From the IMG/VR virus record IMGVR_UViG_3300043410_001892, positions 308,174 through 372,173 of that record: a DNA stretch of 64,000 bases. One strand, written 5' to 3'. Positions 45,411 to 59,931 of the stretch are shown here, in pieces. The notes beneath the pieces were generated by a model. It saw only the letters and a program-made list of their open reading frames with translations. It searched no databases and was not told the origin of the DNA. Every line of letters begins with the position of its first letter. Position 1 is the stretch's first letter. A program made the translations under genes and the position numbers.

Positions 45411-45533
45411 TAACAAAATATTCAAAGAAATAAAAATTCAAATTAAAATAATGAATATGAGCGAATGCGAATTTGAATTATTTTAATTTGTTTGTGAGCT
45501 GTAAGCTCGCAATTTTACTATTAGTGAGGAAAT

Positions 45534-45767
45534 ATGATTGAAATATCTGACAAAACTGCATGCAGGAAATTAGGATACAATGAAGCATGGCTGTATTGCT
45601 TAACTTTAAACCATAATGGACATAAAGATTGGCGTATGCCAGCTCAGTTTGATCATTATCAAGGTAACGACTGGCCAACTTCAACTTGGGTTGAAGTAAG
45701 TAACCCAAATAGTATTATAGATATCACTGATACTTTTGGAATAGTCCCAGTAAGAACTATTGATTAA
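45534..45767 (+). CDS. Array A gene 3
   Basis: YNEAWLYCLTL..NGHKDWRMP...IVPVR. Confidence 0.8.
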   Translation: MIEISDKTACRKLGYNEAWLYCLTLNHNGHKDWRMPAQFDHYQGNDWPTSTWVEVSNPNSIIDITDTFGIVPVRTID

Positions 45768-45833
45768 ATTATCATTTGTAAATTCTAAAAATTTATATTA
45801 CAATAATGTTTTTTAATAATCATGAGGTGCAAC

Positions 45834-46190
45834 ATGGCAAAAAAAGTTAAGTATAAATCAGCCGAAGATAAACGCCGTGCATTAGAAGCTGAAAAACAAT
45901 GGAAAGAAATGACTAAGACATATGGTCTTAGTGATAAGCCGGCTAATACAAAATCACTTAGAACAATCTCACAGAAAAAAACATTAAGTAATGTTGCACC
46001 AACATATAGAGGTAGTGATAGTAAACCTCCCAGTTTAGTTACAACTACTAAAGGTGGCGGCAGCAAAGTTACAGCTCCAAGATATACCGGTACTTTGATT
46101 AAAGGTATCGCAACGATGCATAAATCAAATGCCGTGCCAATTATTGACCAAGAGCAAGCAACTGAGATTTCACGGATGCGTAGAGGATGA
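45834..46190 (+). CDS. Conserved hypothetical phage protein
   Basis: YTGT.IKGIATMHKSNAVP......A.EIS.MRR. Confidence 0.75.
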   Translation: MAKKVKYKSAEDKRRALEAEKQWKEMTKTYGLSDKPANTKSLRTISQKKTLSNVAPTYRGSDSKPPSLVTTTKGGGSKVTAPRYTGTLIKGIATMHKSNAVPIIDQEQATEISRMRRG

Positions 46191-46399
46191 CAGAATTTGC
46201 CCCAATGGTCTTCCATCAGCTAACATATAACGATGCATGGATGTACTGTGTTACATTAGAATACGATGGACATAAGGATTGGCGTTTGCCTACTTTTTTA
46301 GAATGGTGTAATAGAAATGATTTACTTGGTTGGTATGAAAACGCGACGGTGCAAGCCGCAACATCAGTGCGAGCTGTTTGCCCAGTGAGGGATATATGA
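46187..46399 (+). CDS. Array A gene 4
   Basis: AWMYCVTLEYDGHKDWRLPT...VCPVRDI. Confidence 0.8.
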   Translation: MTEFAPMVFHQLTYNDAWMYCVTLEYDGHKDWRLPTFLEWCNRNDLLGWYENATVQAATSVRAVCPVRDI

Positions 46400-46608
46400 T
46401 AGAATTTGCCGCAATGGTCTTCCATCAGCTAACATATAGCGAGGCATGGATGTACTGTGTTACATTAGAATACGATGGACATAAGGATTGGCGCCTGCCA
46501 ACCCTTAACGAATGGAGTAATAGTAGTGAATTACTCGGTTGGTATGAAAACGCGTCGCCGGTTTTCACCCATTCTAAGCGAGCTGTTTGCCCAGTGAGGG
46601 ATATATGA
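46396..46608 (+). CDS. Array A gene 5 (recent duplicate of gene 4)
   Basis: Near-identical DNA to 46187..46399. Confidence 0.8.
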   Translation: MIEFAAMVFHQLTYSEAWMYCVTLEYDGHKDWRLPTLNEWSNSSELLGWYENASPVFTHSKRAVCPVRDI

Positions 46609-46865
46609 TAGAATTTGGTCCATTATCTAGTACAAAATTTTTGTATCGAGATGCATGGCTATATTGTCACACCTTTAATTATAATGGACATAAGGATTGG
46701 CGTATGATAACAAAAGCAGATGCATTCGTATTAGCGTTGGACGGTATAACCATCTATTCTGGTACTTGGATTGATAAAACTGTTCCTGATCACATGTTAA
46801 GTAATAATATATTTGGCGACTTTACACGAGCCCATGTAATACCAGTGAGGGATAAAAATGATTGA
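46605..46865 (+). CDS. Array A gene 6
   Basis: AWLYC..F.YNGHKDWRM...VIPVRD. Confidence 0.8.
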   Translation: MIEFGPLSSTKFLYRDAWLYCHTFNYNGHKDWRMITKADAFVLALDGITIYSGTWIDKTVPDHMLSNNIFGDFTRAHVIPVRDKND

Positions 46866-47079
46866 TTTTGCAGAACTACCAGATTATAGGTTTACTTATA
46901 ATGAAGCATTTCTTTATTGTATAACACTAAGTTACAATGGTCATAAAGACTGGAGAATGCCAACACACGACGAATATATGAATTGCAAAGAGATTGCTAG
47001 TGAATCGTTTGATGACAGTGATGACCCTAAAGATATTAAAGCTAAATATCCCATTGTACCAGTCCGTGATGTGAACTAA
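46858..47079 (+). CDS. Array A gene 7
   Basis: AFLYCITLSYNGHKDWRMPT...IVPVRD. Confidence 0.8.
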   Translation: MIDFAELPDYRFTYNEAFLYCITLSYNGHKDWRMPTHDEYMNCKEIASESFDDSDDPKDIKAKYPIVPVRDVN

Positions 47080-47221
47080 TAACTACTTGCAAATTCTAAT
47101 ATAATTTGTTATAATTATTTTTTAAACTAAATGCGAGGTTATATGATTGATTTATTTTTAACTCTAAGTTTAATTGTAGTAATGCTATATTTGATGAATA
47201 AAGTTAGTGAGATTATCGAAC

Positions 47222-47470
47222 ATGATAGAATTTAGTACGCTATCTGATCAGATGGTTGACAGAGAAACTGCCATCATGTTAGAGTTTATGTGCTGTCACA
47301 ACAATAAAAAAGGTTGGAGATTTCCAACCGATCGAGAATACATCACTCGTAAAGAAATCCCATATGGAGTTTGGTCTAAAGGGTTAGTTGATCGTAATGA
47401 TAAAAAATCAAGATTATGCTTTTTTGTGAGAGATATAAATGACGAAAACATGGAAAGTAGCAGTAGGTGA
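47222..47470 (+). CDS. Array A gene 8
   Basis: MIEF...KKGWRFPT..E...FVRD. Confidence 0.7.
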   Translation: MIEFSTLSDQMVDRETAIMLEFMCCHNNKKGWRFPTDREYITRKEIPYGVWSKGLVDRNDKKSRLCFFVRDINDENMESSSR

Positions 47471-47741
47471 TTACGTAGTAGAAGTTGCTGATTATCCACG
47501 TAACTATATGTCGTATGATGAAGCAGCTATGCACTGTTTGTTTTTGAAAATCAATAAAGCAGCTGGTTGGCGAATACCAACTGCAGCTGAATATAACAAA
47601 ATTGATGGCATCACTTGTATAATTGATAGATATCGTGATAGTGGGCTATCAGCACCATTTGATCAACGTGATTTTGAGTCAGCAATACGTCGACCATTAT
47701 TACCAGTTAGAACTATCAAAGACCCCGCTGTACACACGTAG
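47439..47741 (+). CDS. Array A gene 9
   Basis: YDEA.MHC..L....GWRIPT..E...LPVR. Confidence 0.75.
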   Translation: MTKTWKVAVGDYVVEVADYPRNYMSYDEAAMHCLFLKINKAAGWRIPTAAEYNKIDGITCIIDRYRDSGLSAPFDQRDFESAIRRPLLPVRTIKDPAVHT

Positions 47742-47779
47742 GAAAATAGTAAATAATGAATTAGCCCGGGAGGAAAGTT

Positions 47780-48040
47780 ATGAAAAAACTTATTTTATCA
47801 GTTTTAGAAACTGGTCCAAAGACTCCGATTGAATTATTCAATCTTTGCAAGTTTACAGATCCTTATGTATTTGCAAGAACCATAACTGAACTCACTATTT
47901 CTAAGAAGATTCAAAGAAATGTGATAATCCCTAACCATCCTACAGTTTATCATTCAATTACCGCAGTACCTAATAAACTATTTGAGAATCTCTCATGGGA
48001 AGATATTCGGGTAGAATACCATTTGACATCCACACAGTAA
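47780..48040 (+). CDS. Hypothetical protein (possible winged helix)
   Basis: IL..L..GPKT..EL. Confidence 0.55.
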   Translation: MKKLILSVLETGPKTPIELFNLCKFTDPYVFARTITELTISKKIQRNVIIPNHPTVYHSITAVPNKLFENLSWEDIRVEYHLTSTQ

Positions 48041-48083
48041 TACACTATAATTTAACACATTACAACAACTTTAAGGAATCTAA

Positions 48084-48302
48084 ATGCAAGTGACGCAGAA
48101 CAATAAGGGCGATACAGTTGGTATTATTAAAGACGCAGAGGAAACAGTTATACTAAATTATTCCTTTTGGGAATGCGATTGTTCAACTATGTTTATACGA
48201 CCGGTAACTATTACACATTGTCGACAATGTGGTGCTGATCGTGATGACAGTCCTATTGCAAATGATCTTCATGTACAGATTTTTGTTTATAACACTATTT
48301 AA
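48084..48302 (+). CDS. Hypothetical Zn-ribbon protein
   Basis: WECDC...C.QCG; consensus promoter at 48023. Confidence 0.65.
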   Translation: MQVTQNNKGDTVGIIKDAEETVILNYSFWECDCSTMFIRPVTITHCRQCGADRDDSPIANDLHVQIFVYNTI

Positions 48303-48314
48303 TAAGGAGTAACT

Positions 48315-49394
48315 ATGACACTCGAAGCAACTGCTATTTCAATTCTTGAAGGCGAAGAAGTAAGTCCAATTGATAAAAAAGATGCAATGGAACTTATCGA
48401 ACACTTACAAGCATGGCTGCCAAATTATCCACAAGGTTCAAATAAGTTTATTTCTTATCTACATAAGAATTTAACTCCAATTCACGCAGTCTACGGTTTA
48501 TACTCTGCAGTTGACAATGGTAGTTTAGAAATTACACATCGTAATCTCCAAACTATGATGTTGTTTGAAAAAGATCTTGGTTACTTAGTCAAACATTTAG
48601 AAAATCCAGAGAAGAAGATAAACTTCTTCAATGCTATGCTTAAAGGTACTGATATTTCGTATGTCGAGCTGGAACTAACTAGTCCGTTTATGATTCAACC
48701 AGAAGAAGAGATTGGCACTGGTACATACGAACAAACTGTTGCGATTGAAGATTTATTTGCTAATACTGAAGAAGAAGATACTACAACAGCAGCTTCGACG
48801 ACCTCAGCGCCAAGTGTATCAACTGCAACTAAATCGTCTACTAATAAAATATCAGAACCATTTAAAGATATTTTAGATACTGCTGCTAAAAAAGTACTTG
48901 GCGTAGGAGTTAAGAAGACTGATGCTGAAAAAGATCAAGAACAAGATGATCATGATGCATACTATGTATATACGCAGTATTTGTATCAGTTTACCCCGGA
49001 TGAAGACTGTGATCTTGCTATCTCAGTAGTATCGCAAAAGTTTTGGGATGACAACGGATATCTTGATGATCAACACATCTCGGAGTATTTAGAAGCGATT
49101 ATTCCAGACTGGTCCGATAACTGGTGTGAAACTATGGAAAGTGTATTTGAATACACTGGTGGTTCAACTAAGGCAGAAGCTATTGCTTATTTAAAAGCAA
49201 CTGGGTTCTTTAAAGAAGAAGAACTATTTGATGTTGAATTTAGTAAAGCAGATATCTTACTAGGTTATCTTGAAGGCCAACCTGAAGAAATAATTTCTAA
49301 GTTTCTCAAAGAGGCACTTACACATCTTGATGAAAGCCAAATTGAAGACTTAATTCAAAAGTATGAAGACGCTTGGCACGAAGAGGATGATTGA
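48315..49394 (+). CDS. Acidic hypothetical protein
   Basis: 359 aa, AAGGAG RBS. Confidence 0.75.
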   Translation: MTLEATAISILEGEEVSPIDKKDAMELIEHLQAWLPNYPQGSNKFISYLHKNLTPIHAVYGLYSAVDNGSLEITHRNLQTMMLFEKDLGYLVKHLENPEKKINFFNAMLKGTDISYVELELTSPFMIQPEEEIGTGTYEQTVAIEDLFANTEEEDTTTAASTTSAPSVSTATKSSTNKISEPFKDILDTAAKKVLGVGVKKTDAEKDQEQDDHDAYYVYTQYLYQFTPDEDCDLAISVVSQKFWDDNGYLDDQHISEYLEAIIPDWSDNWCETMESVFEYTGGSTKAEAIAYLKATGFFKEEELFDVEFSKADILLGYLEGQPEEIISKFLKEALTHLDESQIEDLIQKYEDAWHEEDD

Positions 49395-49608
49395 TATACA
49401 CGATCTAGGCATATCAACTGATTACACCACTGCATGGTTGATATGCCTAACCATGGAACACAACGGACATAAAGATTGGCGATTGCCAACATGGTATGAC
49501 TATATAAATAGTGCAGAACTACATGACTGCTGGTATGAAGATGATTTTTACACCGTATACATAGGAAAGAACGTATTTGCAGTTCGTAGCAAAGAGGCCC
49601 CACTGTAA
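49387..49608 (+). CDS. Array A gene 10
   Basis: AWLICLT..HNGHKDWRLPT...AVR. Confidence 0.75.
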   Translation: MIDIHDLGISTDYTTAWLICLTMEHNGHKDWRLPTWYDYINSAELHDCWYEDDFYTVYIGKNVFAVRSKEAPL

Positions 49609-49826
49609 TGGAAAAAATAGAAATTGCTCAAACTACTCGAAAATCCTTAACTTATGCTGAAGCACAGATGTATTGTTTTGTGTATGAAGAGAATAATATT
49701 CGTGGTTGGAGATTACCAACTGAAGATGAGTATGTAAACCACAATGAAATATGGGGTTGGGTTCAAGATGATGAACGTCAAGACGAGTACGGTACCTTGA
49801 GAGTTACTCCAGTGAGAGATTTATGA
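49608..49826 (+). CDS. Array A gene 11
   Basis: YAEAQMYC......GWRLPT..E...VTPVRD. Confidence 0.8.
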   Translation: MEKIEIAQTTRKSLTYAEAQMYCFVYEENNIRGWRLPTEDEYVNHNEIWGWVQDDERQDEYGTLRVTPVRDL

Positions 49827-50056
49827 TTGAGTTTGCCCCTCAATCACCAACCAATATGTCATTTGATGAAGCATTTCTCTATTGTTTAACACTTAACTAC
49901 AAAGGACATAAGGATTGGTCTATACCTTATAGACGAGAGAAACGCTCATACATGATAGGTACTTGGTCTATTGATGATATAAAACTGATAGAGTTTTACT
50001 ATTCATCTGATACAAAGACATCTGTATTTCCTATTAGAGGTTATTATGAATCATGA
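49823..50056 (+). CDS. Array A gene 12
   Basis: AFLYCLTLNYKGHKDW..P...PIRG. Confidence 0.8.
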   Translation: MIEFAPQSPTNMSFDEAFLYCLTLNYKGHKDWSIPYRREKRSYMIGTWSIDDIKLIEFYYSSDTKTSVFPIRGYYES

Positions 50057-50273
50057 ATACGGTATAAGATCGCCCGATCGCTTAACTTTTGACGAAGCAT
50101 TTCTGTATTGCCTTACACATAATTTTAATGGACATAAAGATTGGTATATGCCAACTTTTACTATGTGGGTATTTGATGATGTTATTACTGGCTGGCATAG
50201 TTCAGCTAAACTGCAACGTGATATTAGTTATGACATATCACGAGTTATACCAGTGAGAGATATAGATGATTGA
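50046..50273 (+). CDS. Array A gene 13
   Basis: AFLYCLT..FNGHKDW.MPT...VIPVRDIDD. Confidence 0.8.
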   Translation: MNHEYGIRSPDRLTFDEAFLYCLTHNFNGHKDWYMPTFTMWVFDDVITGWHSSAKLQRDISYDISRVIPVRDIDD

Positions 50274-50481
50274 AATTGCATATAAAACTATAAAAGACAT
50301 GGATTACGATACTGCATGGCTTTATTGTTTGGTATATGAGAAAGACGGGCATAAAGATTGGCGATTGCCTAGTCGTGACGAATACTTTAATACTGACGGA
50401 ATACATCTACATACTTGGTTTGAAAACAGAGAAGATGACACTAAATGGTGTTGCCAACCAGTGAGAGGTATAGATGATTGA
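50266..50481 (+). CDS. Array A gene 14
   Basis: AWLYCL....DGHKDWRLPS...QPVRGIDD. Confidence 0.8.
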   Translation: MIEIAYKTIKDMDYDTAWLYCLVYEKDGHKDWRLPSRDEYFNTDGIHLHTWFENREDDTKWCCQPVRGIDD

Positions 50482-50686
50482 ATTTGCTATACGATCTCAA
50501 GAAGAAATGGTTTACGACCAAGCATTTCTGTATTGTCTAACACTCGAGTATAATGGACATAAAGATTGGCGATTGCCTACAGGAATTGAATATTCTATTA
50601 CGGATGCGCTATCATTTTGCTGGTTTGAAGAAAGAAAAACCGGCGAAAGATGGGTATGTCAACCAGTGAGAGATATAGATGATTGA
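50474..50686 (+). CDS. Array A gene 15
   Basis: AFLYCLTLEYNGHKDWRLPT...QPVRDIDD. Confidence 0.8.
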   Translation: MIEFAIRSQEEMVYDQAFLYCLTLEYNGHKDWRLPTGIEYSITDALSFCWFEERKTGERWVCQPVRDIDD

Positions 50687-50891
50687 AAAAGGACCAGCAG
50701 CTGGAAAAAAACTTCATTATAGAGAAGCGTGGATGTATTGTCTTACACTCTCTTATAACGGACACAAAGATTGGCGTATGCCAAGTTACTTTGAAACTAA
50801 TTACGGGTGGAATGAACGAGATGTAATGAACCCTAATTTAGAATCGCCCTATCAATATTCAATTATACCAGTGAGAGATATAGATGATTGA
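50679..50891 (+). CDS. Array A gene 16
   Basis: AWMYCLTLSYNGHKDWRMPS...IPVRDIDD. Confidence 0.8.
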   Translation: MIEKGPAAGKKLHYREAWMYCLTLSYNGHKDWRMPSYFETNYGWNERDVMNPNLESPYQYSIIPVRDIDD

Positions 50892-51090
50892 ATACGCCCC
50901 ACCAACAACAGAATGTGTAGACTATGACACTGCTTGGCTGTATTGCGTTACCCTAGCACACGATAACAAATACGACTGGCGAATGCCAACACATAAAGAA
51001 TATGAGACTTCTCCATTTATATTAGGTTGGTTTGTAGATAGACCACAGACTGAAAATCTCTGGACTTGCCAACCAGTGCGTGATTGTTAA
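50884..51090 (+). CDS. Array A gene 17
   Basis: AWLYCVTL....YDWRMPT...QPVRD. Confidence 0.8.
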   Translation: MIEYAPPTTECVDYDTAWLYCVTLAHDNKYDWRMPTHKEYETSPFILGWFVDRPQTENLWTCQPVRDC

Positions 51091-51157
51091 ACCATTTGCA
51101 ATTTTAAATTTATACTGTTATAATATATTTTTATTTACACACCCCGCGGGAGTATAT

Positions 51158-51451
51158 ATGTCTAACGAACTTATTGAAAAATTAGCACAAGACCCAGGTT
51201 CTCATTCAGCTTACATTGAGGATTCAGAATTACGAGAAATGGCAATTGTATGGGCAGTTGTAATTCGTAATGAAACCCGACCAGATCATTATTCAGAGTA
51301 TGTAAAACGAATAGATGAGATGAAGAAAAATGAGCCATTGTTGTATAGACGATTTGCTGACTATCTAGTCGATACTGTTGAAAACGGTACACATAGCGCA
51401 GCTTGGAGTGCACCAGCAGACCGTATTCGTAGAACATTACTACCTAAGTGA
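51158..51451 (+). CDS. Hypothetical protein
   Basis: Start MSNELIEK, GGGAG RBS, early promoter at 51097. Confidence 0.65.
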   Translation: MSNELIEKLAQDPGSHSAYIEDSELREMAIVWAVVIRNETRPDHYSEYVKRIDEMKKNEPLLYRRFADYLVDTVENGTHSAAWSAPADRIRRTLLPK

Positions 51452-51458
51452 GGTAAGC

Positions 51459-51662
51459 ATGGCAATTGAACACGCGCCACGTTCTGAACATAAGATGAGT
51501 TACGAACAAGCAGAGATATACGCATTTATGTGTAACCATGACGGTAAGCGCGGTTGGCGCTTACCGACCTTTAACGAGTTTGTGGATCCTAATACATGGT
51601 ATAAAGATGCTGAGATTACTAAAAGAAAGTGGTTTGTTGCACCAGTGAGGGATATAAAATGA
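51459..51662 (+). CDS. Array A gene 18
   Basis: YEQA..YA....DGKRGWRLPT..E...APVRDIK. Confidence 0.75.
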   Translation: MAIEHAPRSEHKMSYEQAEIYAFMCNHDGKRGWRLPTFNEFVDPNTWYKDAEITKRKWFVAPVRDIK

Positions 51663-51991
51663 ACTTTGAGATATCACCAAAAACGATGGAGATACACGCT
51701 ACGTGGGATCAAGCAGTTATTTACTGTTTTGGTTTAGGAGATGGTTGGCGATTACCAACGTTGGCGGAATTACAAGAAATAACCACAATCTCTAAAAATT
51801 CCCTTAATCCTACAACAAGCGTACTAACACATGTCCCATATCATGATATGGCAAATAAATGGCATTGGTCGTCTGACGAATATGAGTATAATAACAATAA
51901 AGTCTTGTGTTTCAATTATTGGACCAATACAATGTGGGACTGCGATAAAAACAACTGTTATATTATTAGACCAGTGAGGGATATAAAATGA
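51659..51991 (+). CDS. Array A gene 19, near full-length DUF1566 domain
   Basis: TW.QA..YC..LG.GWRLPT..EL...WSS.E...IRPVRD. Confidence 0.85.
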   Translation: MNFEISPKTMEIHATWDQAVIYCFGLGDGWRLPTLAELQEITTISKNSLNPTTSVLTHVPYHDMANKWHWSSDEYEYNNNKVLCFNYWTNTMWDCDKNNCYIIRPVRDIK

Positions 51992-52194
51992 AAGCTAAAG
52001 AACTAATTAAATTATTATCACAACATCCTAACGCTGATGTGGTTATAAGTGACTATAATGGTTGGGAAACACCATTTTATGATGTCGATGCTATTGAATT
52101 CCATGAAAATAGTTATCCTGTTGGTGAAAATATTAGAAAAAGTGCCAAGCCTAATAATGGTTTGGTTACTTTCACATTGGGTAAGAGACATTAA
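51988..52194 (+). CDS. Hypothetical protein (unrelated gene within array)
   Basis: MK.KELI..L...P.ADV. Confidence 0.65.
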   Translation: MKAKELIKLLSQHPNADVVISDYNGWETPFYDVDAIEFHENSYPVGENIRKSAKPNNGLVTFTLGKRH

Positions 52195-52195
52195 A

Positions 52196-52591
52196 ATGAT
52201 TGAATATGCACCAATCGCTATTACCAAACAACACTATGACAACAGATCCTCAGTTTATTCGGATAAATTGTTTGTGGTATGGATGCCAGATAATACCAGA
52301 AGAAAAACAATCGAACTAGCCATTAAATCAGTAAGTTTATCTTGGGCTAATTTAGCACATGATGATTTGTCAGAGTTAGATTTATCAGGTCTAGATCTTT
52401 CTTATGCTGATTTATCGTTTGCAAATTTGTCAAATGCTAATCTAACCAATACGAATTTATTTCAAGCAAGTTTACGTGGAGCAGATCTTACAGGTGCATT
52501 ACTTGACAATACCAACCTACAATATGTGGATCTGTCCTATGCAACTTTAGATCATACCAACTTACACAACTGCAACTTCCATAAATTATGA
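52196..52591 (+). CDS. Pentapeptide-repeat protein with array-A-type N-terminus
   Basis: MIEYAP start, then A(D/N)LS/T pentapeptide repeats. Confidence 0.8.
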   Translation: MIEYAPIAITKQHYDNRSSVYSDKLFVVWMPDNTRRKTIELAIKSVSLSWANLAHDDLSELDLSGLDLSYADLSFANLSNANLTNTNLFQASLRGADLTGALLDNTNLQYVDLSYATLDHTNLHNCNFHKL

Positions 52592-52902
52592 ATATTGAAC
52601 TAGCCCCTTACAAATATTGGCTGATTGACACTAATTTTGACACAGCTAAAATGCACTGCTTTTTTCTTAACATTGACAATAAGCTTGGTTGGCGTTTACC
52701 AACTAATCAAGAAGCCTGTGATCTTGTTAATTTTGTTGAATCGTTAGATACTGATTTCCCAAAAGAATTACAAGAGTTTTCAGAGTATTGGTTTGATGAC
52801 GAGAGTTATGGTTTTTGGACTTTTGAAGATGAAGATCTTCATTCAAATGCAGATTTAGGCGAATTATTTACAGTAATCCCCGTGAGAGATAAAGATGCTT
52901 GA
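52588..52902 (+). CDS. Array A gene 20
   Basis: FDTA.MHC..L....GWRLPT..E...VIPVRD. Confidence 0.8.
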   Translation: MNIELAPYKYWLIDTNFDTAKMHCFFLNIDNKLGWRLPTNQEACDLVNFVESLDTDFPKELQEFSEYWFDDESYGFWTFEDEDLHSNADLGELFTVIPVRDKDA

Positions 52903-53104
52903 ACATGCACCAAGAATAGAAAAAGATATGTGTTATGATACCGCATGGCTTCACTGCCTAACACTTAACTATAATGGCCATAAAGATTGGCGATTACCAA
53001 CTCAAAGAGAATATGATAAATCTAGTATAACAATAAGTTGGTTTGAAGATAGATTACCAACACCATTACAATGGTACTGTCAACCTGTACGCGATATAAT
53101 ATAA
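52895..53104 (+). CDS. Array A gene 21
   Basis: AWLHCLTLNYNGHKDWRLPT...QPVRD. Confidence 0.8.
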   Translation: MLEHAPRIEKDMCYDTAWLHCLTLNYNGHKDWRLPTQREYDKSSITISWFEDRLPTPLQWYCQPVRDII

Positions 53105-53189
53105 TCTTTACAAATCAACAAATAATTGCTATACTATATTTTTTTAACACTACAGCAAGCAGGCCCCGCTGTACACACAGGAGCATAAC

Positions 53190-53792
53190 ATGGCAACACG
53201 TAGCGCAATTGGTTTTATGAGAAACGATGGTACTGTCCGTGCAGTATATTGTCATTGGGATGGATACTTATCACACGTTGGTAAAATCCTTATTGAGAAT
53301 TATGATTTACTTGGTGTTGATGACTTATGCGATTTAGGTGATATAAGCTCATTAGGTGAAACAATTGAAGATACTGTGTTTTACGGACGCGATCGCAACG
53401 AAGATGATGTTGAAGCACATGAGTTTGCATCTGAACAAGAGTTTGTAGATTGGTATGATGATTCTGAGTTTTTCTACTTAATAAAAGATGACAAATGGTA
53501 TGTGTCAGAACATTGCGAAGAGTTCTCGTTACTTGAAGATCGTTTAAAAGATACAAAAGTTAAGTTTACTAAGTATGTTCGTCCAGATGAAACAACAACA
53601 TCCTACAGTGCAAGAGATGCAGTAGTAGCAATGGTAGCCGATGGTGTAGTTGAACCAGTGTATATGGTTAAGTTATTGCTTGATCGTATTGATCCTGAAA
53701 CATTAGAAGCGTTGTTGAAAGAAGAATTCCACATTGACGAGATCATTCCAGAATGCTACTTTGAAGAGGAGGAAAATAATGAAATTGATTAA
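53190..53792 (+). CDS. Conserved hypothetical phage protein
   Basis: MATRS.IG......VYCHWDGY...VG..L...GDISSL...YGRDR.E. Confidence 0.75.
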   Translation: MATRSAIGFMRNDGTVRAVYCHWDGYLSHVGKILIENYDLLGVDDLCDLGDISSLGETIEDTVFYGRDRNEDDVEAHEFASEQEFVDWYDDSEFFYLIKDDKWYVSEHCEEFSLLEDRLKDTKVKFTKYVRPDETTTSYSARDAVVAMVADGVVEPVYMVKLLLDRIDPETLEALLKEEFHIDEIIPECYFEEEENNEID

Positions 53793-54009
53793 ACTAACAG
53801 AGTTAAACACTGATCCTATGGTAATACCTAACACTTATCATATACCAGTTGAGAAAATTGATTATGTTATTGAACATGAAACAGGATCAACTGTTGTAGT
53901 CAATCGTGCAGATTTAAGGGTAATTGAACCAGCTGAATATATCAATAGCATATTATCAGCTAATACTGATTTTAGTAATTTTGGAGGGTTTGATGAGTAC
54001 GTCAATTAA
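53779..54009 (+). CDS. Hypothetical protein
   Basis: Start MKLIKLT. Confidence 0.6.
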   Translation: MKLIKLTELNTDPMVIPNTYHIPVEKIDYVIEHETGSTVVVNRADLRVIEPAEYINSILSANTDFSNFGGFDEYVN

Positions 54010-54283
54010 AGTCAATGTTGTAGCTAAGGATTCTAAACCTAAAAAACCAGTAATCAAAAAACGTTTGGTTCAGGTTGATAATCATCGCATTCGAATCGCT
54101 GAAACTGATTTGCCACATAAAGGTAATGTTGACCTGCATGATCCTAAGATTAAAGAACGCGGACCTAATCAAGAATTGGTAGTGTATGCTACTGCCAAAG
54201 AAGATACTTACGAACCTGGGAGAGAATACGTCTGTTACTTTACTCTTAAAGGTAAACTTGAAGGTTACTTCACAGTCAATTAG
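53993..54283 (+). CDS. Hypothetical protein
   Basis: Start MSTSIKV. Confidence 0.6.
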   Translation: MSTSIKVNVVAKDSKPKKPVIKKRLVQVDNHRIRIAETDLPHKGNVDLHDPKIKERGPNQELVVYATAKEDTYEPGREYVCYFTLKGKLEGYFTVN

Positions 54284-54291
54284 AAGGCACA

Positions 54292-54696
54292 ATGAATATT
54301 ACATTTGCAAGTTTAAAGACAACTGGTAAAGTTGAAACAGTATGGTGTGTACTTGATCTTGGTATGTCAAATTATTATAGTGACCTAGGTTACAGAGATC
54401 ATATTCGAGATTATCTAATAGTATGGGGTAGGCGTGGTGGCAAATTACAGACTATTGTGAAACGAGGACACACTAAAATCTCTATCAATAAAGACATTTA
54501 CGATCAAGAATTTCGCGAAAATATGTGGGGTTTTTACCAAATTACTCACGGCCAAGGTATGGCTATAGCTAAACGGATTTATAAGATTCTTAAGAAAGAT
54601 TATATTCCATTTAAGGCAGATTCTCTCGAAGAGATTGATCCAAACTTACCTGAACAGCTAAACAAATTAGTATTTTGGGAGACTATGAAATTATGA
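54292..54696 (+). CDS. WGR-like domain protein
   Basis: WGRRGGKLQ...K..K.Y; paralog of 55104..55448. Confidence 0.6.
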   Translation: MNITFASLKTTGKVETVWCVLDLGMSNYYSDLGYRDHIRDYLIVWGRRGGKLQTIVKRGHTKISINKDIYDQEFRENMWGFYQITHGQGMAIAKRIYKILKKDYIPFKADSLEEIDPNLPEQLNKLVFWETMKL

Positions 54697-54875
54697 GTGG
54701 ATTAGGATATATTGCAGCTGAACTTGAACAGTGTTGTGAACTCTGTGGCAAAATTGAAGAATGTCGTCCGTATGGTCCTAATGGTGAACAAATCTGTTTT
54801 GACTGTGGTATGAAAGATGAAGAAACTACTAAACAACAGATGGCAAAGTATATCTTTGGAGTAGACAGTGATTAA
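54693..54875 (+). CDS. Small Zn-finger protein
   Basis: CELCG...ECRPYG..GE.IC.DC. Confidence 0.7.
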   Translation: MSGLGYIAAELEQCCELCGKIEECRPYGPNGEQICFDCGMKDEETTKQQMAKYIFGVDSD

Positions 54876-55107
54876 AGATAATCCGTTGCTCGATTATGCT
54901 CCACCGTTAAATAAACCTGTAGATGAAGATACCGCATTCATGTATTGTATAACACTAAGTTACAATGGTTATAAAGACTGGAGATTCCCAACAAGACCTG
55001 AATTTGGAGATACGGGTGATGTATGGTTTGACGGTGAGAACTTTTCTAATGCATCTGGCTATTGGAGATGGCGAGTTCAACCAGTAAGATCTAAAGAGGA
55101 TATATGA
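54868..55107 (+). CDS. Array A gene 22
   Basis: AFMYCITLSYNGYKDWRFPT...QPVR. Confidence 0.8.
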   Translation: MIKDNPLLDYAPPLNKPVDEDTAFMYCITLSYNGYKDWRFPTRPEFGDTGDVWFDGENFSNASGYWRWRVQPVRSKEDI

Positions 55108-57038: not shown

Positions 57039-57069
57039 AAGGTGCTTTGGTAACAGAGCACCTTTTTTT
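57039..57069 (+). terminator. Rho-independent terminator
   Basis: AAGGTGCTTTG-GTAA-CAGAGCACCTT followed by T run. Confidence 0.8.
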
Positions 57070-57079
57070 ATGAGATTAT

Positions 57080-57274
57080 ATGATAGAATTTTCATTTGAC
57101 GAACAAAATGGTGTTATTCATCGTACTAATGGTCCAGCTTGGATAAATCCAGGATATGGACATACTCCACTTGGATACTATTGGCATTGGCGGCTATTTG
57201 GCGTTAGACATCGTTATTATGGACCGCAAAATCGGGATGGTGATTGGTGGTTACATGGGAAGAGAGTAAAATGA
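57080..57274 (+). CDS. Array B gene 1 (HRxNGPA/HRYYGP)
   Basis: HRTNGPA...W.LFG.RHRYYGP...W.LHGKRVK. Confidence 0.8.
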   Translation: MIEFSFDEQNGVIHRTNGPAWINPGYGHTPLGYYWHWRLFGVRHRYYGPQNRDGDWWLHGKRVK

Positions 57275-57474
57275 TTGAAATACGAAACACTGCTAACAAT
57301 GGATTTGTATATCTTTTAGATGGTAATTGGCATCGATCTAATGGCCCTGCTAGGGTATGGGCAAATGGAGAATGGGGATGGTATTTAACTGATCGCCAAC
57401 ATCGCTATTATGGTCCGCAAGCAAACAATGAGTGGTGGATACATGGGGAGTGTATAAAATATGGATTCGACTAA
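57271..57474 (+). CDS. Array B gene 2
   Basis: HRSNGPA...HRYYGP. Confidence 0.8.
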   Translation: MIEIRNTANNGFVYLLDGNWHRSNGPARVWANGEWGWYLTDRQHRYYGPQANNEWWIHGECIKYGFD

Positions 57475-57682
57475 GTCACAACGATATTTATACAGTTATT
57501 TAACACCTAATGATACAGTTGAGTACAAATTGCATACTGGTGGGTTTCATCGATGTGATGGACCTGCACTAACACGATATGAAAGATGGGCATGGTTTTT
57601 ATATGATCAACATCATCGGTATTATGGTCCGCAGCACTCACATTATCCTAATTGGATGATTCATGGGAAGAGGGTTAAATGA
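57461..57682 (+). CDS. Array B gene 3
   Basis: HRCDGPA...HRYYGP. Confidence 0.8.
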   Translation: MDSTKSQRYLYSYLTPNDTVEYKLHTGGFHRCDGPALTRYERWAWFLYDQHHRYYGPQHSHYPNWMIHGKRVK

Positions 57683-57879
57683 TTAAACAAACTAAAAACG
57701 ATCATAGTATTAGGTTTACTAAAGATGGTAAGTTGCATTGTGCAAATGGTCCAACAGTATCATGGAATGATGGTTCATGGTCCTGGTATTTAGATGGCTA
57801 TCCTCATCGTTATTATGGACCACAAAAATCTTATGTGTTATATCGTAACTGGTATATTCACGGGATTGAAATTAAATGA
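57679..57879 (+). CDS. Array B gene 4
   Basis: HCANGP...HRYYGP. Confidence 0.8.
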   Translation: MIKQTKNDHSIRFTKDGKLHCANGPTVSWNDGSWSWYLDGYPHRYYGPQKSYVLYRNWYIHGIEIK

Positions 57880-58076
57880 TTATAAGAATTGAAGAAGAAC
57901 ATAGTATATGCTATCGATTAGAAAATGGTGTGTGCCATCGACCTAATGGACCTGCTGTAGAGTTTAAGGCTGACAAGACAGGCTATTGGTTCTTGTTTGG
58001 TAAACGACATAGATACTATGGTCCGGCATCTCATGCTAATAATTGGTTTTGGATACATGACAAGAGAGTTAAATGA
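57876..58076 (+). CDS. Array B gene 5
   Basis: HRPNGPA...HRYYGP. Confidence 0.8.
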   Translation: MIIRIEEEHSICYRLENGVCHRPNGPAVEFKADKTGYWFLFGKRHRYYGPASHANNWFWIHDKRVK

Positions 58077-58267
58077 TTACAAAAACTAAGGAAGGCAGTA
58101 TTGTTGTATACCGATTAAATGACATGTGGCATCGATCTAGTGGTCCTGCTTATGAGTTTCCTAATGGTAAAGGCTTTTGGGCATTATTTGGTAAACGACA
58201 TAGATACTATGGTCCGGCATCTCCCTATAGTAACATATATTATCTACATGACAGGTTGGTTAAATGA
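58073..58267 (+). CDS. Array B gene 6
   Basis: HRSSGPA...HRYYGP. Confidence 0.8.
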   Translation: MITKTKEGSIVVYRLNDMWHRSSGPAYEFPNGKGFWALFGKRHRYYGPASPYSNIYYLHDRLVK

Positions 58268-58491
58268 TAGAAAGATTTGAAGACATTGAATGTGTTCGTT
58301 ACCGATTAAATGGTGTGCCTCATCGAACTAATGGACCTGCGTTTGAATGGCTAAATGGTGACTGGAGTTGGGCATTGCATGGGAAAATACATCGTTATTA
58401 CGGACTTGCAGGTAGCAATGCAATGATAGATATTTTTCATGAATCGCGCAAAATAAAGTTTTGGGTATTGCACGGTGAGAGAGTTAGATGA
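58264..58491 (+). CDS. Array B gene 7
   Basis: HRTNGPA...HRYYG. Confidence 0.8.
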   Translation: MIERFEDIECVRYRLNGVPHRTNGPAFEWLNGDWSWALHGKIHRYYGLAGSNAMIDIFHESRKIKFWVLHGERVR

Positions 58492-58712
58492 TTGATCGAA
58501 TTGAGGAAAACGATCGTGTTTGTTATCGATTAAATGGGGTGCCTCACCGTCCTAATGGACCTGCGTTTGAATGGCCAAATGGTGACTGGAGTTGGTCGTT
58601 GTATGGGAAAATACATCGCTATTACGGACCTGCGGCTTGCAATGAAACGATAGATAAGTATCATGGCGGCAATTCAAAGTTTTGGGTATTGCACGGTGAG
58701 GGAGTTAGATGA
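58488..58712 (+). CDS. Array B gene 8 (recent duplicate of gene 7)
   Basis: HRPNGPA...HRYYGP. Confidence 0.8.
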   Translation: MIDRIEENDRVCYRLNGVPHRPNGPAFEWPNGDWSWSLYGKIHRYYGPAACNETIDKYHGGNSKFWVLHGEGVR

Positions 58713-58948
58713 TTGAAGAAAGACAGTGTGTAGCATCAGTTGTTGGTACATACACAGAATATGTAAAAGACAATAAACCTCATCGACCCAATGGCCCGGC
58801 AAGGATCTATAATGATGGTGATGCTTACTGGTGGTTATATGGGAATAGACATAGATACTATGGACCTCAAACATCTAACCAAGAACGATCAATTTGGCGA
58901 GTACACGACCGGGAAATGAAATATGAAGTCCACTGGATTGAAGAATAA
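58709..58948 (+). CDS. Array B gene 9
   Basis: HRPNGPA...HRYYGP. Confidence 0.8.
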   Translation: MIEERQCVASVVGTYTEYVKDNKPHRPNGPARIYNDGDAYWWLYGNRHRYYGPQTSNQERSIWRVHDREMKYEVHWIEE

Positions 58949-59117
58949 TAAGTATTATGAGCATCGAGAAGATGACAAGTTACACTGCACTAATGGTCCG
59001 GCATGTGCTGCCGGACCAAACAGTTGGTTATGGTGTTTAAATGATCAACCTCATAGATATTACGGTCCTTACCATTCTGACGGATGTTGGTGTCTTCACG
59101 GGAAAAGAGTTAAATGA
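58923..59117 (+). CDS. Array B gene 10
   Basis: HCTNGPA...HRYYGP. Confidence 0.8.
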   Translation: MKSTGLKNNKYYEHREDDKLHCTNGPACAAGPNSWLWCLNDQPHRYYGPYHSDGCWCLHGKRVK

Positions 59118-59323
59118 CTAAGCCACACCGATATGTAAGCACTTATTGTGAAACTGATGATACAGTTATTTATAGAGTGCTCAATGATTATCATCGATGT
59201 GATGGACCTGCACTAATACAATATGACAAATGGGGATGGTTTTTGTTTAACAACTGGCACAGGTATTATGGAGAGGCTCGTAGTGCCGGTGATTGGTATA
59301 TTCACGGGAAATTAGTTAAATGA
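59114..59323 (+). CDS. Array B gene 11
   Basis: HRCDGPA...HRYYG. Confidence 0.8.
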   Translation: MTKPHRYVSTYCETDDTVIYRVLNDYHRCDGPALIQYDKWGWFLFNNWHRYYGEARSAGDWYIHGKLVK

Positions 59324-59511
59324 TAAAAAAAACAGATGGCGGATATTATTATGAATATCGATCAAATGGTAAGAGACATCAAGTCAATGGTCCTGCGTTA
59401 GTCTTTGTTACTGGTGAAAAATATTGGTTTTTATATGATCAATGGCATAGATATTATGGCTATCAATCTAACAAGAATCAATGGTGGTTACATGGGGAAA
59501 AAATTAAATGA
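59320..59511 (+). CDS. Array B gene 12
   Basis: HQVNGPA...HRYYG. Confidence 0.8.
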   Translation: MIKKTDGGYYYEYRSNGKRHQVNGPALVFVTGEKYWFLYDQWHRYYGYQSNKNQWWLHGEKIK

Positions 59512-59720
59512 TTGAACAATTTGAGTACCATAGTTGCACAGTATATTTAAAGGACGGCGAACCGCATCGTCCTAATGGACCAGCAAGGATATACCGTGAT
59601 GGATCTAAGTATTGGTGGTTATATGGGATTCGCCATCGATACTATGGACCACAATGTAAGGATATTTATGGAACAATTTGGAGAATACATGGCTTACTGA
59701 TAAAACATGAACACAAATAA
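59508..59720 (+). CDS. Array B gene 13
   Basis: HRPNGPA...HRYYGP. Confidence 0.8.
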   Translation: MIEQFEYHSCTVYLKDGEPHRPNGPARIYRDGSKYWWLYGIRHRYYGPQCKDIYGTIWRIHGLLIKHEHK

Positions 59721-59871
59721 CGATCTAACACATAAGACTAATGGCCCCGCTGTAACGTGTAGCAACGGTTATTGGTCATGGAGATTATTTAACAATTATC
59801 ACAGGTATTACGGTCCGGTAAATAGTAGAGGACGATGGTGTATTCATAACAAGTGGGTTAAATGGTTGTAA
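59707..59871 (+). CDS. Array B gene 14 (54 aa, not in track)
   Basis: MNTNNDLTHKTNGPAV...HRYYGP...WCIHNKWVKWL. Confidence 0.7.
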   Translation: MNTNNDLTHKTNGPAVTCSNGYWSWRLFNNYHRYYGPVNSRGRWCIHNKWVKWL

Positions 59872-59931
59872 AAATCATTGTACATTTCTGTGATAATATG
59901 CTATAATATATTTTTTTACTTGCAAAATTAT

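What the first reader, a model, noticed from the sequence alone, without database searches (positions are those of the whole stretch)
57080..59871. Second, unrelated array: 14 consecutive HRxNGPA/HRYYGP mini-genes
Seen: 14 back-to-back 54-79 aa ORFs with no intervening gene. Each has one H(R/C)x(N/D)GPA unit, one HRYYG(P) unit and a W.(L/I)H(G/D)..VK end, and most are joined by ATGA overlaps. Known: LHRxDGPA-type beta-hairpin repeats normally occur as internal repeats of longer phage and giant-virus proteins. Inference: the repeat protein has been split into separately encoded, Trp/His/Tyr-rich two-repeat units that might co-assemble combinatorially. Two independent families with the same architecture suggest a general diversification strategy in this phage.
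Basis: partly seen in the sequence, partly recalled or inferred. Interest (0 to 1): 0.8.

Follow-up and report, generated by a model that had tools for sequence, protein, structure and literature searches.

The report
Jumbo-phage array of MORN-like mini-genes
The 14 back-to-back tiny genes are real and are one cluster of a 57-copy family of small beta-hairpin-repeat proteins in a 372-kb freshwater phage; a related phage carries at least 125 copies at the same place, so the family is under selection and turns over fast, but what the proteins bind is unknown.

Summary
In detail: there are 14 intact + strand genes (54-79 aa) at 57080-59871, and 10 of the 13 junctions are ATGA overlaps. They are only one cluster. 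The complete 372,173-bp T4-type jumbo phage genome holds 57 copies (11.7 kb). These are interleaved with 48 copies of an unrelated Lcl_C/DUF1566-like mini-gene family in one 64-kb + strand region rich in sigma70-type promoters.

Each protein has one canonical HRxNGPA repeat, one HRYYGP variant (57/57 invariant) and a truncated third repeat. Profile comparison (98.9%, E 3.5e-17) aligns it with the last 2.5 repeats of canonical 23-aa HRxDGPA repeat proteins. AlphaFold models and fold searches point to a MORN-like single-layer beta-hairpin sheet.

The copies are coding and under selection: pS>pN in 99.9% of pairs, there are no pseudogenes, and all 230 HRYYG motifs in four sequences lie in intact ORFs. 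None of the 120 best homologues has two units, so the idea of a split long repeat protein is not supported. Tandem duplication of a whole short gene fits better.

A related contig shares the right flank (76-96% nt) and the first unit, yet carries at least 125 copies with almost no orthologues. That shows strong birth-and-death turnover.

Function is inferred only: a diversified set of small binding proteins used in phage-host conflict. It is a new variant of a known kind.

The parts
57039..57071 (+). Intrinsic-terminator-like hairpin (11-bp stem, T run) 9-16 nt before gene 1
   Evidence: it is one of only three strong + strand terminators in the 64-kb small-gene region, and each lies just upstream of a cluster of this family.
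57080..57274 (+). Mini-gene 1, 64 aa (HRTNGPA, HRYYGP, WWLHGKRVK)
   Evidence: HMM E 1e-19. Its orthologue in the related contig is L004 2784-2963, 64% aa, dN/dS 0.50.
57271..57474 (+). Mini-gene 2, 67 aa, ATGA overlap with gene 1
   Evidence: E 6e-25. Its orthologue is L001 786-980, 62% aa, dN/dS 0.54.
57461..57682 (+). Mini-gene 3, 73 aa, 14-nt overlap
57679..57879 (+). Mini-gene 4, 66 aa, ATGA overlap
57876..58076 (+). Mini-gene 5, 66 aa, ATGA overlap; this is the copy that was modelled
   Evidence: AlphaFold2 model: pLDDT 86, all beta-hairpins.
58073..58267 (+). Mini-gene 6, 64 aa, ATGA overlap
58264..58491 (+). Mini-gene 7, 75 aa, ATGA overlap; it has an insertion before the last half-repeat
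   Evidence: Its closest paralogue is gene 8 (69% aa, dN/dS 0.47, dS 0.38).
58488..58712 (+). Mini-gene 8, 74 aa, ATGA overlap
58709..58948 (+). Mini-gene 9, 79 aa, ATGA overlap
58923..59117 (+). Mini-gene 10, 64 aa, 26-nt overlap
59114..59323 (+). Mini-gene 11, 69 aa, ATGA overlap
59320..59511 (+). Mini-gene 12, 63 aa, ATGA overlap
59508..59720 (+). Mini-gene 13, 70 aa, ATGA overlap
59707..59871 (+). Mini-gene 14, 54 aa, 14-nt overlap; last of the cluster
59879..59907 (+). Sigma70-type promoter-like site (extended -10) directly after the array; it starts the next transcription unit
   Evidence: Similar sites follow two other clusters of the family, at genome 24189 and 27295.
43740..55107 (+).

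Best explanation
The 14 genes are one cluster of a very large, fast-turning-over family of separately translated mini-proteins of about 65 aa.

Anatomy. Each protein is a minimal member of the HRxDGPA (MORN-like) beta-hairpin repeat superfamily. It has one canonical repeat, one family-specific HRYYGP repeat and a truncated terminal half-repeat. The predicted fold is a small single-layer beta sheet, with a conserved Trp/Tyr/His/Gly/Pro scaffold and variable residues between the scaffold positions.

Origin of the arrays. They arose by repeated unequal-crossover duplication of a whole short gene together with its junction. The stop of one gene overlaps the start of the next (ATGA), and the conserved C-terminal codons supply a Shine-Dalgarno-like stretch, so copies are probably translated by coupling from polycistronic mRNA. 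Copies are old (about 40% identical), individually kept intact by selection, and gained, lost and exchanged between related phages.

Function (inferred, not shown). The copies form a repertoire of small binding modules. They are expressed from the early or accessory + strand region of a T4-type jumbo phage and used in phage-host conflict, as host-takeover or anti-defence binders with many different targets or target variants. This is analogous to repeat-protein multigene families of giant viruses and to MORN_2/YwqK-type immunity proteins.

Confidence by part: about 0.9 for anatomy, homology, selection and turnover; about 0.35-0.4 for the binder/conflict function.
For: Shown.
- There are 57 intact copies, all on the + strand, in seven clusters of a complete 372,173-bp genome.
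- HRYYG is invariant in 57/57 copies, and W38, H21, G25 and P26 are nearly so.
- pS>pN in 99.9% of paralogue pairs (median pN 0.43; pS 0.75, saturated). The youngest pairs have dN/dS 0.3-0.8, and six orthologue pairs have 0.37-0.54, with one at 1.37.
- All 230 HR(Y/F)YG motifs in G000, L001, L004 and L005 lie in intact ORFs.
- 36 junctions are ATGA. An SD-like tetramer lies at -18..-5 in 30/57 starts against 17% at internal positions.
- hhalign against canonical multi-repeat relatives gives 98.9%, E 3.5e-17, aligned to their last 2.5 repeats.
- The AF2 model has pLDDT 86 and is all beta-hairpin. The best AFDB matches are MORN repeat and YwqK-family proteins, TM 0.7-0.82. The best BFVD matches are Atu_ph07, uncultured Caudovirales and giant-virus MORN proteins. 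The Atlas neighbours are nearly all viral.
- Turnover: the related contig (L004 + L001) shares the right flank (76-96% nt) and the first unit (81% nt) but has 56+69 copies in about 29.5 kb. Only 5 of its 125 copies have a partner of 65% identity or more in another genome, although G000 is complete. Flank genes are 63-95% aa identical with dS 0.05-0.78, so point divergence alone cannot explain the missing orthologues.
- Context: 15 of 16 sigma70 extended -10 sites lie on the + strand of this 64-kb region.

Inferred: the binding role (from the fold class, the scaffold/variable-residue pattern and the birth-and-death dynamics) and translational coupling.
Against: - There is no expression or protein evidence. 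No RNA run was listed as holding the stretch.
- There is no match to any anti-defence or defence model (PADLOC), to NCBIfam, or to Pfam for the members themselves.
- Matches to solved structures are weak: no significant match for the unit, and MORN1 E 0.025 / MORN4 Z 6.3 for the longer relative.
- The proteins are mostly basic (median pI 9.2) and 24% aromatic plus His, which would also fit nucleic-acid or glycan binding.
- A terminator sits directly upstream of three clusters and no strong promoter was found in front of the window's array, so the timing and level of expression are unclear.
- Paralogues are old (dS 0.28 or more), so this is not a recent burst of the poxvirus 'accordion' type.
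- Orthologue dN/dS of about 0.4-0.5 is no higher than in neighbouring accessory genes.
Confidence: 0.5

Rival explanations
1. Structural co-assembly. The mini-proteins pair through the exposed edge strands of their single-layer sheets, with the truncated C-terminal half-repeat docking onto the N-terminal hairpin of another copy. This would build mixed homo- or hetero-oligomers or filaments, for example a scaffold or a virion decoration.
For: The predicted fold is a single-layer hairpin sheet with free edges. All copies end in a half-repeat that, in longer relatives, is followed by further structure (a helix). Known MORN proteins dimerise through their repeats (established knowledge; MORN1 structures were the best PDB matches). 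Many copies are co-encoded and probably co-translated.
Against: No multimer prediction could be run. None of the 120 best homologues is a natural fusion of two units, although fusions are commonly found between obligate partners. The genes lie in a sigma70-promoter-rich small-gene region and not among the structural genes. Near-complete turnover of the repertoire between related phages fits poorly with a co-adapted assembly.
Confidence: 0.12
2. Nucleic-acid-binding family. These would be small basic aromatic beta-sheet proteins that coat or recognise DNA or RNA, serving as gene regulators, in nucleoid remodelling, or in protecting phage DNA, with the paralogues differing in specificity.
For: Median pI is 9.2, net charge is +3, and W+Y+F+H make up 24%. 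Relatives of the repeat are fused to an HNH endonuclease, an LHH nuclease-toxin domain, a YopX domain, a protein named 'terminase', a nucleotide-modification domain and a dATP/dGTP diphosphohydrolase N-terminal domain. Precedent: about 35 zinc-ribbon copies in Bacillus phage G, proposed to be specific transcription factors or structural DNA binders (PMC7824862).
Against: The fold class is known for protein and lipid binding, not for DNA binding (established knowledge of MORN). Some copies are acidic (pI down to 4.3). No known DNA-binding family matched.
Confidence: 0.15
3. The ORFs are joined into long repeat proteins by programmed frameshifting or stop bypass at the ATGA junctions, so the real product is a conventional long HRxDGPA repeat protein.
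For: ATGA junctions place each next ORF in the -1 frame. Long proteins with up to 20 matched stretches of this repeat exist elsewhere.
Against: Met is conserved at the first position in 55 of 56 aligned copies, and the stop always follows the same C-terminal motif. Junctions also occur with overlaps of 8, 14, 26 or 34 nt and with gaps of 2-42 nt, so no single frameshift rule fits. An SD-like sequence is enriched before each start. Gene callers never found a protein with two HRYYG units among 120 homologues. The N-terminal strand region is part of the confidently modelled fold (pLDDT 92-93 for residues 1-20).
Confidence: 0.03
4. Neutral or selfish expansion. The copies would be decaying duplicates or filler DNA with no function of their own.
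For: The copy number is very large and variable (57 versus at least 125). No function is assigned. For giant viruses, repeat-protein gene number correlates with genome size (PMC5753266).
Against: There are no pseudogenes: 230 of 230 motifs lie in intact ORFs. Synonymous sites are saturated while the scaffold residues remain invariant. Orthologue dN/dS is about 0.4-0.5. The same 39-copy stretch is identical apart from 1 mismatch in 8,401 nt in two sequencing runs.
Confidence: 0.05

Closest known systems
Canonical HRxDGPA 23-residue repeat proteins of phages and bacteria. There is no dedicated Pfam repeat model; they are caught only through a short segment of DUF6745, PF20530. Examples: seven 91-145-aa proteins on contig L003, PA5oct EST35_0328, and several Agrobacterium phage Atu_ph07 proteins.
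   Same: They are homologous (hhalign 98.9%, E 3.5e-17). They share the period of about 23-24 residues, the W..G..HR.(D/N)GPA core, the truncated last half-repeat and the hairpin-sheet model.
   Different: Canonical proteins have 3 to more than 20 equal repeats, often with a C-terminal helix or an enzyme domain, and occur singly or in a few dispersed copies (9 matches in Atu_ph07, 3 in PA5oct, 0 in Phosso and Vibrio phage 2.275.O). The window family has a fixed layout of 2.5 repeats with an invariant HRYYG second repeat, is never fused, and occurs in arrays of 14 to more than 125 genes.
MORN / MORN_2 repeat proteins, including the YwqK-family antitoxin (immunity) proteins of polymorphic toxin systems
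   Same: They share the repeat length and the predicted single-layer beta-hairpin sheet. They are the best AFDB and Atlas structural neighbours (TM 0.7-0.82). MORN1 and MORN4 are the best PDB matches of the longer relative. They are binding modules, and immunity genes can also occur in tandem arrays (own knowledge).
   Different: There is no sequence match to the Pfam MORN/MORN_2 or NCBIfam YwqK models. The consensus differs (HRxDGPA instead of YxGxWxxGxxHGxG). No partner toxin gene was identified. The proteins are much shorter.
Repeat-domain multigene families of giant viruses (MORN, ankyrin, FNIP and others) and the roughly 35-copy zinc-ribbon expansion of Bacillus phage G
   Same: All are lineage-specific expansions of small binding domains in very large viral genomes, clustered in accessory regions and thought to act in host interaction (PMC5753266; PMC7824862).
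   Different: Here each gene is a single minimal unit of about 65 aa joined to the next by ATGA. Copy numbers (57 and at least 125) exceed what those two papers report for phages. Two unrelated families show the same layout side by side.
Multigene families at genome ends of poxviruses and African swine fever virus ('genomic accordion') (own knowledge, not tested here)
   Same: Copy number varies between related viruses, the copies lie in an accessory region, and evolution follows a birth-and-death pattern.
   Different: The copies here are old (dS 0.28 or more; about 40% aa identity), not recent amplifications. The target and the selective agent are unknown.

Membership tests
HRxDGPA beta-hairpin repeat superfamily (uncurated; partly covered by Pfam DUF6745) | Profile-level homology to canonical W..G..HR.(D/N)GPA repeats | tested here: met
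   hhalign of A1 against A3 gives 98.9%, E 3.5e-17 over 48 columns. The family profile finds 23,039 cluster representatives, and the long ones carry up to 22 canonical repeats.
HRxDGPA beta-hairpin repeat superfamily (uncurated; partly covered by Pfam DUF6745) | Several equal tandem repeats of about 23 residues in one polypeptide | tested here: inconclusive
   The spacing from G25 to G49 is 24 residues. There is one canonical repeat, one divergent repeat (HRYYGP) and one half-repeat. This is a minimal, modified version.
Pfam DUF6745 (PF20530, 206-position domain) | Match over the gathering score across the domain | tested here: not met
   The 10 window members scanned gave no DUF6745 hit at E up to 1; the only hit was a chance-level one to Pop8, E 0.19, for one member. 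Longer relatives match only profile positions of about 48-88. Only the repeat motif is shared, so these are not members.
MORN (PF02493) / MORN_2 (PF07661) | Sequence match to the repeat models | tested here: not met
   There is no MORN or MORN_2 hit for members or relatives.
MORN (PF02493) / MORN_2 (PF07661) | Single-layer antiparallel sheet built from successive beta-hairpins | tested here: inconclusive
   AF2 models have pLDDT 86 and 89 and hairpin strands. AFDB matches to MORN/YwqK proteins reach TM 0.7-0.82, E 6e-5 to 1e-2. PDB matches are MORN1 at E 0.025, prob 0.99, and MORN4 at Z 6.3, which are below firm thresholds. These are predicted models only.
YwqK-family antitoxin / polymorphic-toxin immunity protein | Match to the NCBIfam family model | tested here: not met
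   There is no NCBIfam hit at E up to 0.01.
YwqK-family antitoxin / polymorphic-toxin immunity protein | Adjacent cognate toxin gene, and neutralisation of that toxin | not tested
   In the window, neighbours are other copies or small ORFs of unknown function. No systematic toxin search was made, and neutralisation needs an experiment.
Viral multigene family evolving by birth and death | Many tandem paralogues, each under purifying selection | tested here: met
   There are 57 copies, pS>pN in 99.9% of pairs, and no pseudogenes.
Viral multigene family evolving by birth and death | Copy number and content differ between related genomes at a syntenic locus | tested here: met
   The count is 14 here against at least 125 in the related contig, between an orthologous first unit and a shared right flank. 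Only 5 of those 125 copies have a partner of 65% identity or more in another genome.
Anti-defence or defence protein families | Match to a known model | tested here: not met
   PADLOC gave no hit. PHROGs gave none apart from one weak hit to a family of unknown function.

The most novel reading that the evidence does not exclude
A clade of freshwater T4-type jumbo phages carries a germline-encoded library of dozens to more than a hundred minimal beta-hairpin binder proteins, alongside a second library on a lectin-like Lcl_C scaffold. Each binder would have a different specificity. The library would be renewed by duplication, loss and exchange of whole ATGA-linked gene units between phages. In effect it would be an innate repertoire of inhibitors or adaptors that lets one phage cope with many variants of host defences, toxins or other targets.
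Probability: 0.3. Interest if true: 0.85.

Novelty: new variant of a known kind. Interest (0 to 1): 0.7.

Why it matters
If the inferred role holds, these arrays would be the largest diversified gene repertoire I found reported for a bacteriophage. The two families make up about 105 genes, or 6.6% of the genome, and a relative has at least 125 copies of one family in about 29.5 kb. That would extend to phages the giant-virus pattern of expanding repeat-domain binders, but with the smallest possible unit.

The family is also useful as material for experiments. There are hundreds of natural variants of a 65-residue scaffold with an invariant core. This suits deep mutational, structural or binder-discovery work, and studies of how tandem, translationally coupled genes are born and lost.

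The canonical HRxDGPA repeat matches 23,039 cluster representatives but has no curated repeat model, which is a gap in annotation.

Tried and rejected
- Pfam, PHROGs, NCBIfam and PADLOC scans of members gave nothing usable.
- Megablast and tblastn against 50,697 phage records found no match.
- A profile search of PDB sequences gave only chance hits to a nanobody CDR.
- Foldseek and VIA searches of the PDB with the 66-aa model were not significant. The Swiss-Prot AFDB search gave nothing.
- Rfam found no RNA family and TRF found no gene-sized DNA period, so an RNA or iteron reading was rejected.
- The search for related loci with the alignment failed for lack of a conserved stretch. With a single protein it gave only a 10-residue match (L002), which the family HMM did not confirm.
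- The genome search could not reach the records behind L001 and L002.
- A T4-like capsid-targeting or prohead-protease motif at the N-terminus was considered. (L/I/V)xE occurs in the first 12 residues of only 9 of 57 copies, so it was rejected.
- Concerted evolution or a recent burst was rejected. Adjacent copies are 45% identical, against 39% between clusters, and the nearest relative of a copy is as often in another genome as in its own.
- Laying contigs of four other metagenomes gave fragmented pieces. It also gave joints, such as an ATGA-to-ATGA skip of genes 9-10 in run X9 and a skip from gene 3 to gene 11 in X3. These may be real rearrangements, paralogous loci or assembly collapse, so they were not used as evidence.
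- Literature searches for DUF6745, for the motif and for phage mini-gene arrays found no description.


Full report
**1. Observation**

The ORF listing shows 14 consecutive + strand ORFs from 57080 to 59871 with nothing between them. With ATG starts they encode 54-79 aa. Ten of the 13 junctions are ATGA overlaps and three are longer overlaps. All 14 carry H-x-x-(N/D/S)-G-P-(A/T), an exact HRYYG, and a C-terminal (W/Y)-x-(I/L/V)-H-(G/D/N)-x-x-(V/I/M)-(K/R). Each copy scores E 1e-19 to 6e-25 against the family HMM. At DNA level no gene-sized tandem period is detectable and no Rfam family matches.

**2. Genome context**

- The window is the last 64 kb of a 372,173-bp virus record whose ends overlap by 83 bp, meaning a circularly closed assembly.
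- The phage has a T4-type Gp23 capsid protein. Its nearest relatives are Sinorhizobium phage Phosso (77%), Vibrio phage 2.275.O (71%) and Pseudomonas phage PA5oct (70%). The window also holds class Ia RNR genes and collagen-like tail fibres.
- Near-identical DNA occurs in freshwater, aquatic and microbial-mat metagenomes.
- An HMM census of all six frames finds 57 copies of the family, all on the + strand. They lie at 19.8-21.2, 23.5-24.2, 25.3-25.7, 26.5-27.3, 33.9-39.3, 42.9-43.6 and 365.25-368.04 kb; the last cluster is the finding.
Its signature is dWRLPT...PVRD, and it matches Pfam Lcl_C/DUF1566 weakly or above the cut-off.
- The two families are interleaved in one 64-kb region that spans the arbitrary start of the record. 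Together they occupy about 24.4 kb, or 6.6% of the genome.
- Fifteen of the 16 sigma70-type extended -10 promoter matches in the genome lie on the + strand of this region. This suggests transcription by the host polymerase, as for early genes of T4-like phages (inference).
- Only three strong + strand intrinsic terminators occur in the region. Each lies directly upstream of a cluster of this family, including 57039-57071 in front of gene 1. This is unexplained.

**3. What the proteins are**

- The members scanned (10 of the 14) match no Pfam repeat or domain family, no NCBIfam or PADLOC model, and in PHROGs only one weak hit to a family of unknown function.
- The 5.8-billion-protein search finds 193 homologues, unnamed and almost all from metagenomes, with a median length of 66 aa.
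- The exhaustive profile search finds 23,039 cluster representatives. The best are long proteins, up to 1,927 aa with up to 20 matched stretches, carrying up to 22 canonical HRxDGPA repeats and no HRYYG. The only Pfam model touching them is DUF6745, through about 20-30 positions.
- Short canonical relatives on contig L003 have 3-5 repeats of 23 residues, a truncated last repeat and a C-terminal helix.
- hhalign aligns the mini-family to the last two and a half repeats of these relatives (98.9%, E 3.5e-17). HRYYGP is therefore a fixed variant of HRxDGPA, and W-x-I-H-G-x-x-V-K is the usual terminal half-repeat.
- The AlphaFold2 model of gene 5 (122-sequence alignment, pLDDT 86) is made of beta-hairpins.
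- Its best AFDB cluster matches are MORN-repeat and YwqK-family antitoxin proteins (TM 0.7-0.82). Its best viral matches are proteins of Agrobacterium phage Atu_ph07, uncultured Caudovirales and giant-virus MORN proteins. The Atlas gives the same picture.
- PDB matches are not significant for the 66-aa unit. For the 124-aa relative the top Foldseek hits are all MORN proteins (MORN1 E 0.025, prob 0.99), and VIA gives MORN4 at Z 6.3, beside other single-layer sheets.
- I therefore call the fold MORN-like. I do not file the family under MORN, MORN_2, DUF6745 or YwqK, because their sequence models are not met.

**4. Are they real, separate genes?**

- Yes, as far as sequence can show. Among the 1,596 paralogue pairs pS exceeds pN in 99.9%. 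Synonymous sites are saturated (median 0.75) while pN is 0.43.
- HRYYG, W38 and the H-x-x-N-G-P-A core are invariant or nearly so. Positions between them have entropies above 3 bits.
- Orthologue pairs with the related contig give dN/dS 0.37-0.54, with one short pair at 1.37. This is similar to neighbouring accessory genes, at 0.17-0.70.
- All 230 HR(Y/F)YG motifs in the forward frames of G000, L001, L004 and L005 lie in intact ORFs, nearly all with full HMM coverage. No decayed copies were seen.
- Met is conserved at position 1 in 55 of 56 aligned copies. SD-like tetramers lie 5-18 nt upstream of 53% of starts, against 17% at internal positions. These sit inside the conserved C-terminal codons of the preceding gene, so that motif is probably under double constraint (inference).
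- Junction geometry varies: -4, -8, -14, -26, and +2 to +42. No homologue with two HRYYG units exists among the 120 best hits. Both facts argue against a frameshift-fused polyprotein.
- No RNA run was listed as holding the region, so expression is untested.

**5. Evolution**

- Paralogues are old. The closest pair has dS 0.28, and mean identity is 45% for neighbours, 41% within clusters and 39% between clusters.
- A 39-kb JGI contig was fetched as L004 and L001, with 4.2 kb between them not fetched. It carries 56 + 69 copies in one + strand array of about 29.5 kb.
- The DNA to the right of that array matches the DNA right of the window's array at 76-96% nt. Its second unit matches gene 1 at 81% nt. 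Four units in its middle are collinear with the genome's 35.6-36.4-kb cluster at 87% nt. The locus is therefore syntenic, but it holds 14 copies here and at least 125 there, and cluster segments have moved.
- Only about 7 of the 57 copies have a recognisable orthologue on that contig. Only 5 of the contig's 125 copies have a partner of 65% identity or more in any other sequence, although G000 is a complete genome. Flanking proteins are 63-95% identical with dS 0.05-0.78.
- With dN/dS near 0.5, that amount of divergence cannot turn orthologues into 50%-identical proteins. The repertoire must have been replaced by gain, loss and exchange of units.
- On short time scales arrays are stable. Two Logan contigs from different runs share 39 copies, with 1 mismatch in 8,401 nt. 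An 18-kb contig has 51 copies.
- Cultured relatives have no arrays: Phosso 0 matches, Vibrio phage 2.275.O 0, PA5oct 3 weak matches, and Atu_ph07 9 dispersed matches to canonical-type proteins.

**6. Mechanism**

Shown:
- This is a minimal HRxDGPA/MORN-like protein family of separately encoded units.
- The copies are under purifying selection.
- The genes sit in ATGA-linked tandem arrays with strong birth-and-death turnover.
- They lie in a promoter-rich accessory region beside a second family organised in the same way.

Inferred:
- Arrays grow and shrink by unequal recombination between units, which preserves the ATGA junction.
- Units are translated by coupling.
- The proteins are small binders whose variable residues set their specificity, and they are used in conflict with the host.

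The function rests on three things: the known role of MORN-type sheets as binding modules, the YwqK analogy, and the evolutionary pattern. I give it about 0.35-0.4.

Rivals:
- Nucleic-acid binding. The proteins are basic and aromatic, and relatives are fused to nuclease and nucleotide enzymes.
- Frameshift fusion and neutral filler, both largely excluded.

**7. Novelty**

Lineage-specific expansions of repeat-domain proteins are known in giant viruses (PMC5753266). A roughly 35-copy zinc-ribbon expansion is known in phage G (PMC7824862). I found no description of this family, of DUF6745 in phages, or of mini-gene arrays of this size in the searchable literature. It is a new variant of a known kind. 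Three features make it notable: the minimal unit, the copy numbers (57 and at least 125), and the parallel Lcl_C-like family.

Noticed in passing
window 43740-55107 (genome 351913-363280; also genome 2.4-11.2 kb, 20.0 kb and 41.3-43.8 kb): There is a second multigene family of 48 copies (68-147 aa stop-to-stop), 22 of them in the window. Its signature is MIE.AP...Y.EA..YC..L...G..dWRLPT...PVRD. Several copies match Pfam Lcl_C/DUF1566 weakly, and one matches above the cut-off (38.7 bits). It is interleaved with the HRYYGP family on the same strand.
   Followed up: partly
window 55990-56018, 56234-56262, 59879-59907, 60672-60700: There are repeated sigma70-type promoter-like sites with an extended -10 (TTGCAA-17-TATAAT with TG). 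Genome-wide, 15 of 16 matches to this pattern lie on the + strand of the 64-kb mini-gene region. Three of them come directly after clusters of the family (genome 24189 and 27295, and window 59879).
   Followed up: partly
window 57039-57071; genome 19790-19814 and 33865-33897: The only three strong + strand intrinsic-terminator-like hairpins in the 64-kb region each sit just upstream of the first gene of a cluster of this family. It is unclear whether the arrays are expressed by read-through, by anti-termination or from an unrecognised promoter.
   Followed up: partly
window 57068: In metagenome run X9 a contig carries a 10-nt insertion (a duplication of TATGAGATTA) between the terminator and the start of gene 1.
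   Followed up: no
window 58708/59114 and 57619/59264: Contigs of other metagenomes show joints that skip whole units. In X9 the skip is genes 9-10, from one ATGA junction to another. In X3 the skip runs from gene 3 to gene 11 at similar positions within the two genes. These may be real unit deletions, paralogous loci or assembly collapse.
   Followed up: partly
window 56733-56981: The 82-aa ORF just upstream of the terminator contains DYRHFGPDYNW, which is faintly reminiscent of the HRYYGP motif. The family HMM does not detect it.
   Followed up: no
window 7795-11056 and 27313-29610 (- strand): Three large paralogous genes give very strong hits to collagen-like tail-fibre PHROGs (up to 3e-159). 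This points to multiple tail fibres, as in other jumbo myoviruses.
   Followed up: no
window 15301-19696 (- strand): These are class Ia ribonucleotide reductase small and large subunit genes. The large subunit is at most about 59% identical to those of Xanthomonas, Ralstonia and Stenotrophomonas phages.
   Followed up: no
L003 10001-14953: A different phage contig (84 kb) carries seven canonical HRxDGPA proteins (3-5 repeats plus a C-terminal helix). They lie beside a CCA-adding/poly(A) polymerase-like gene, a methyltransferase and a pyrimidine-dimer excision (DenV-like) gene.
   Followed up: partly
P0164 (335 aa, metagenome): This protein has seven stretches matching the family profile (canonical-type HRxDGPA repeats), fused to a dATP/dGTP diphosphohydrolase N-terminal domain (PF18909, E 2.5e-23). 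AFDB neighbours include fusions to HNH, LHH, YopX and nucleotide-modification domains.
   Followed up: no
L005 316-8716 versus L006 1-8401: Two Logan contigs from different sequencing runs carry the same 39-copy stretch of the family, with one mismatch and no gap in 8,401 nt.
   Followed up: yes
genome 1-83 and 372091-372173: The record's 'direct terminal repeat' is only an 83-bp overlap, i.e. a circularly closed assembly. The mini-gene region is therefore continuous across the record's ends.
   Followed up: yes
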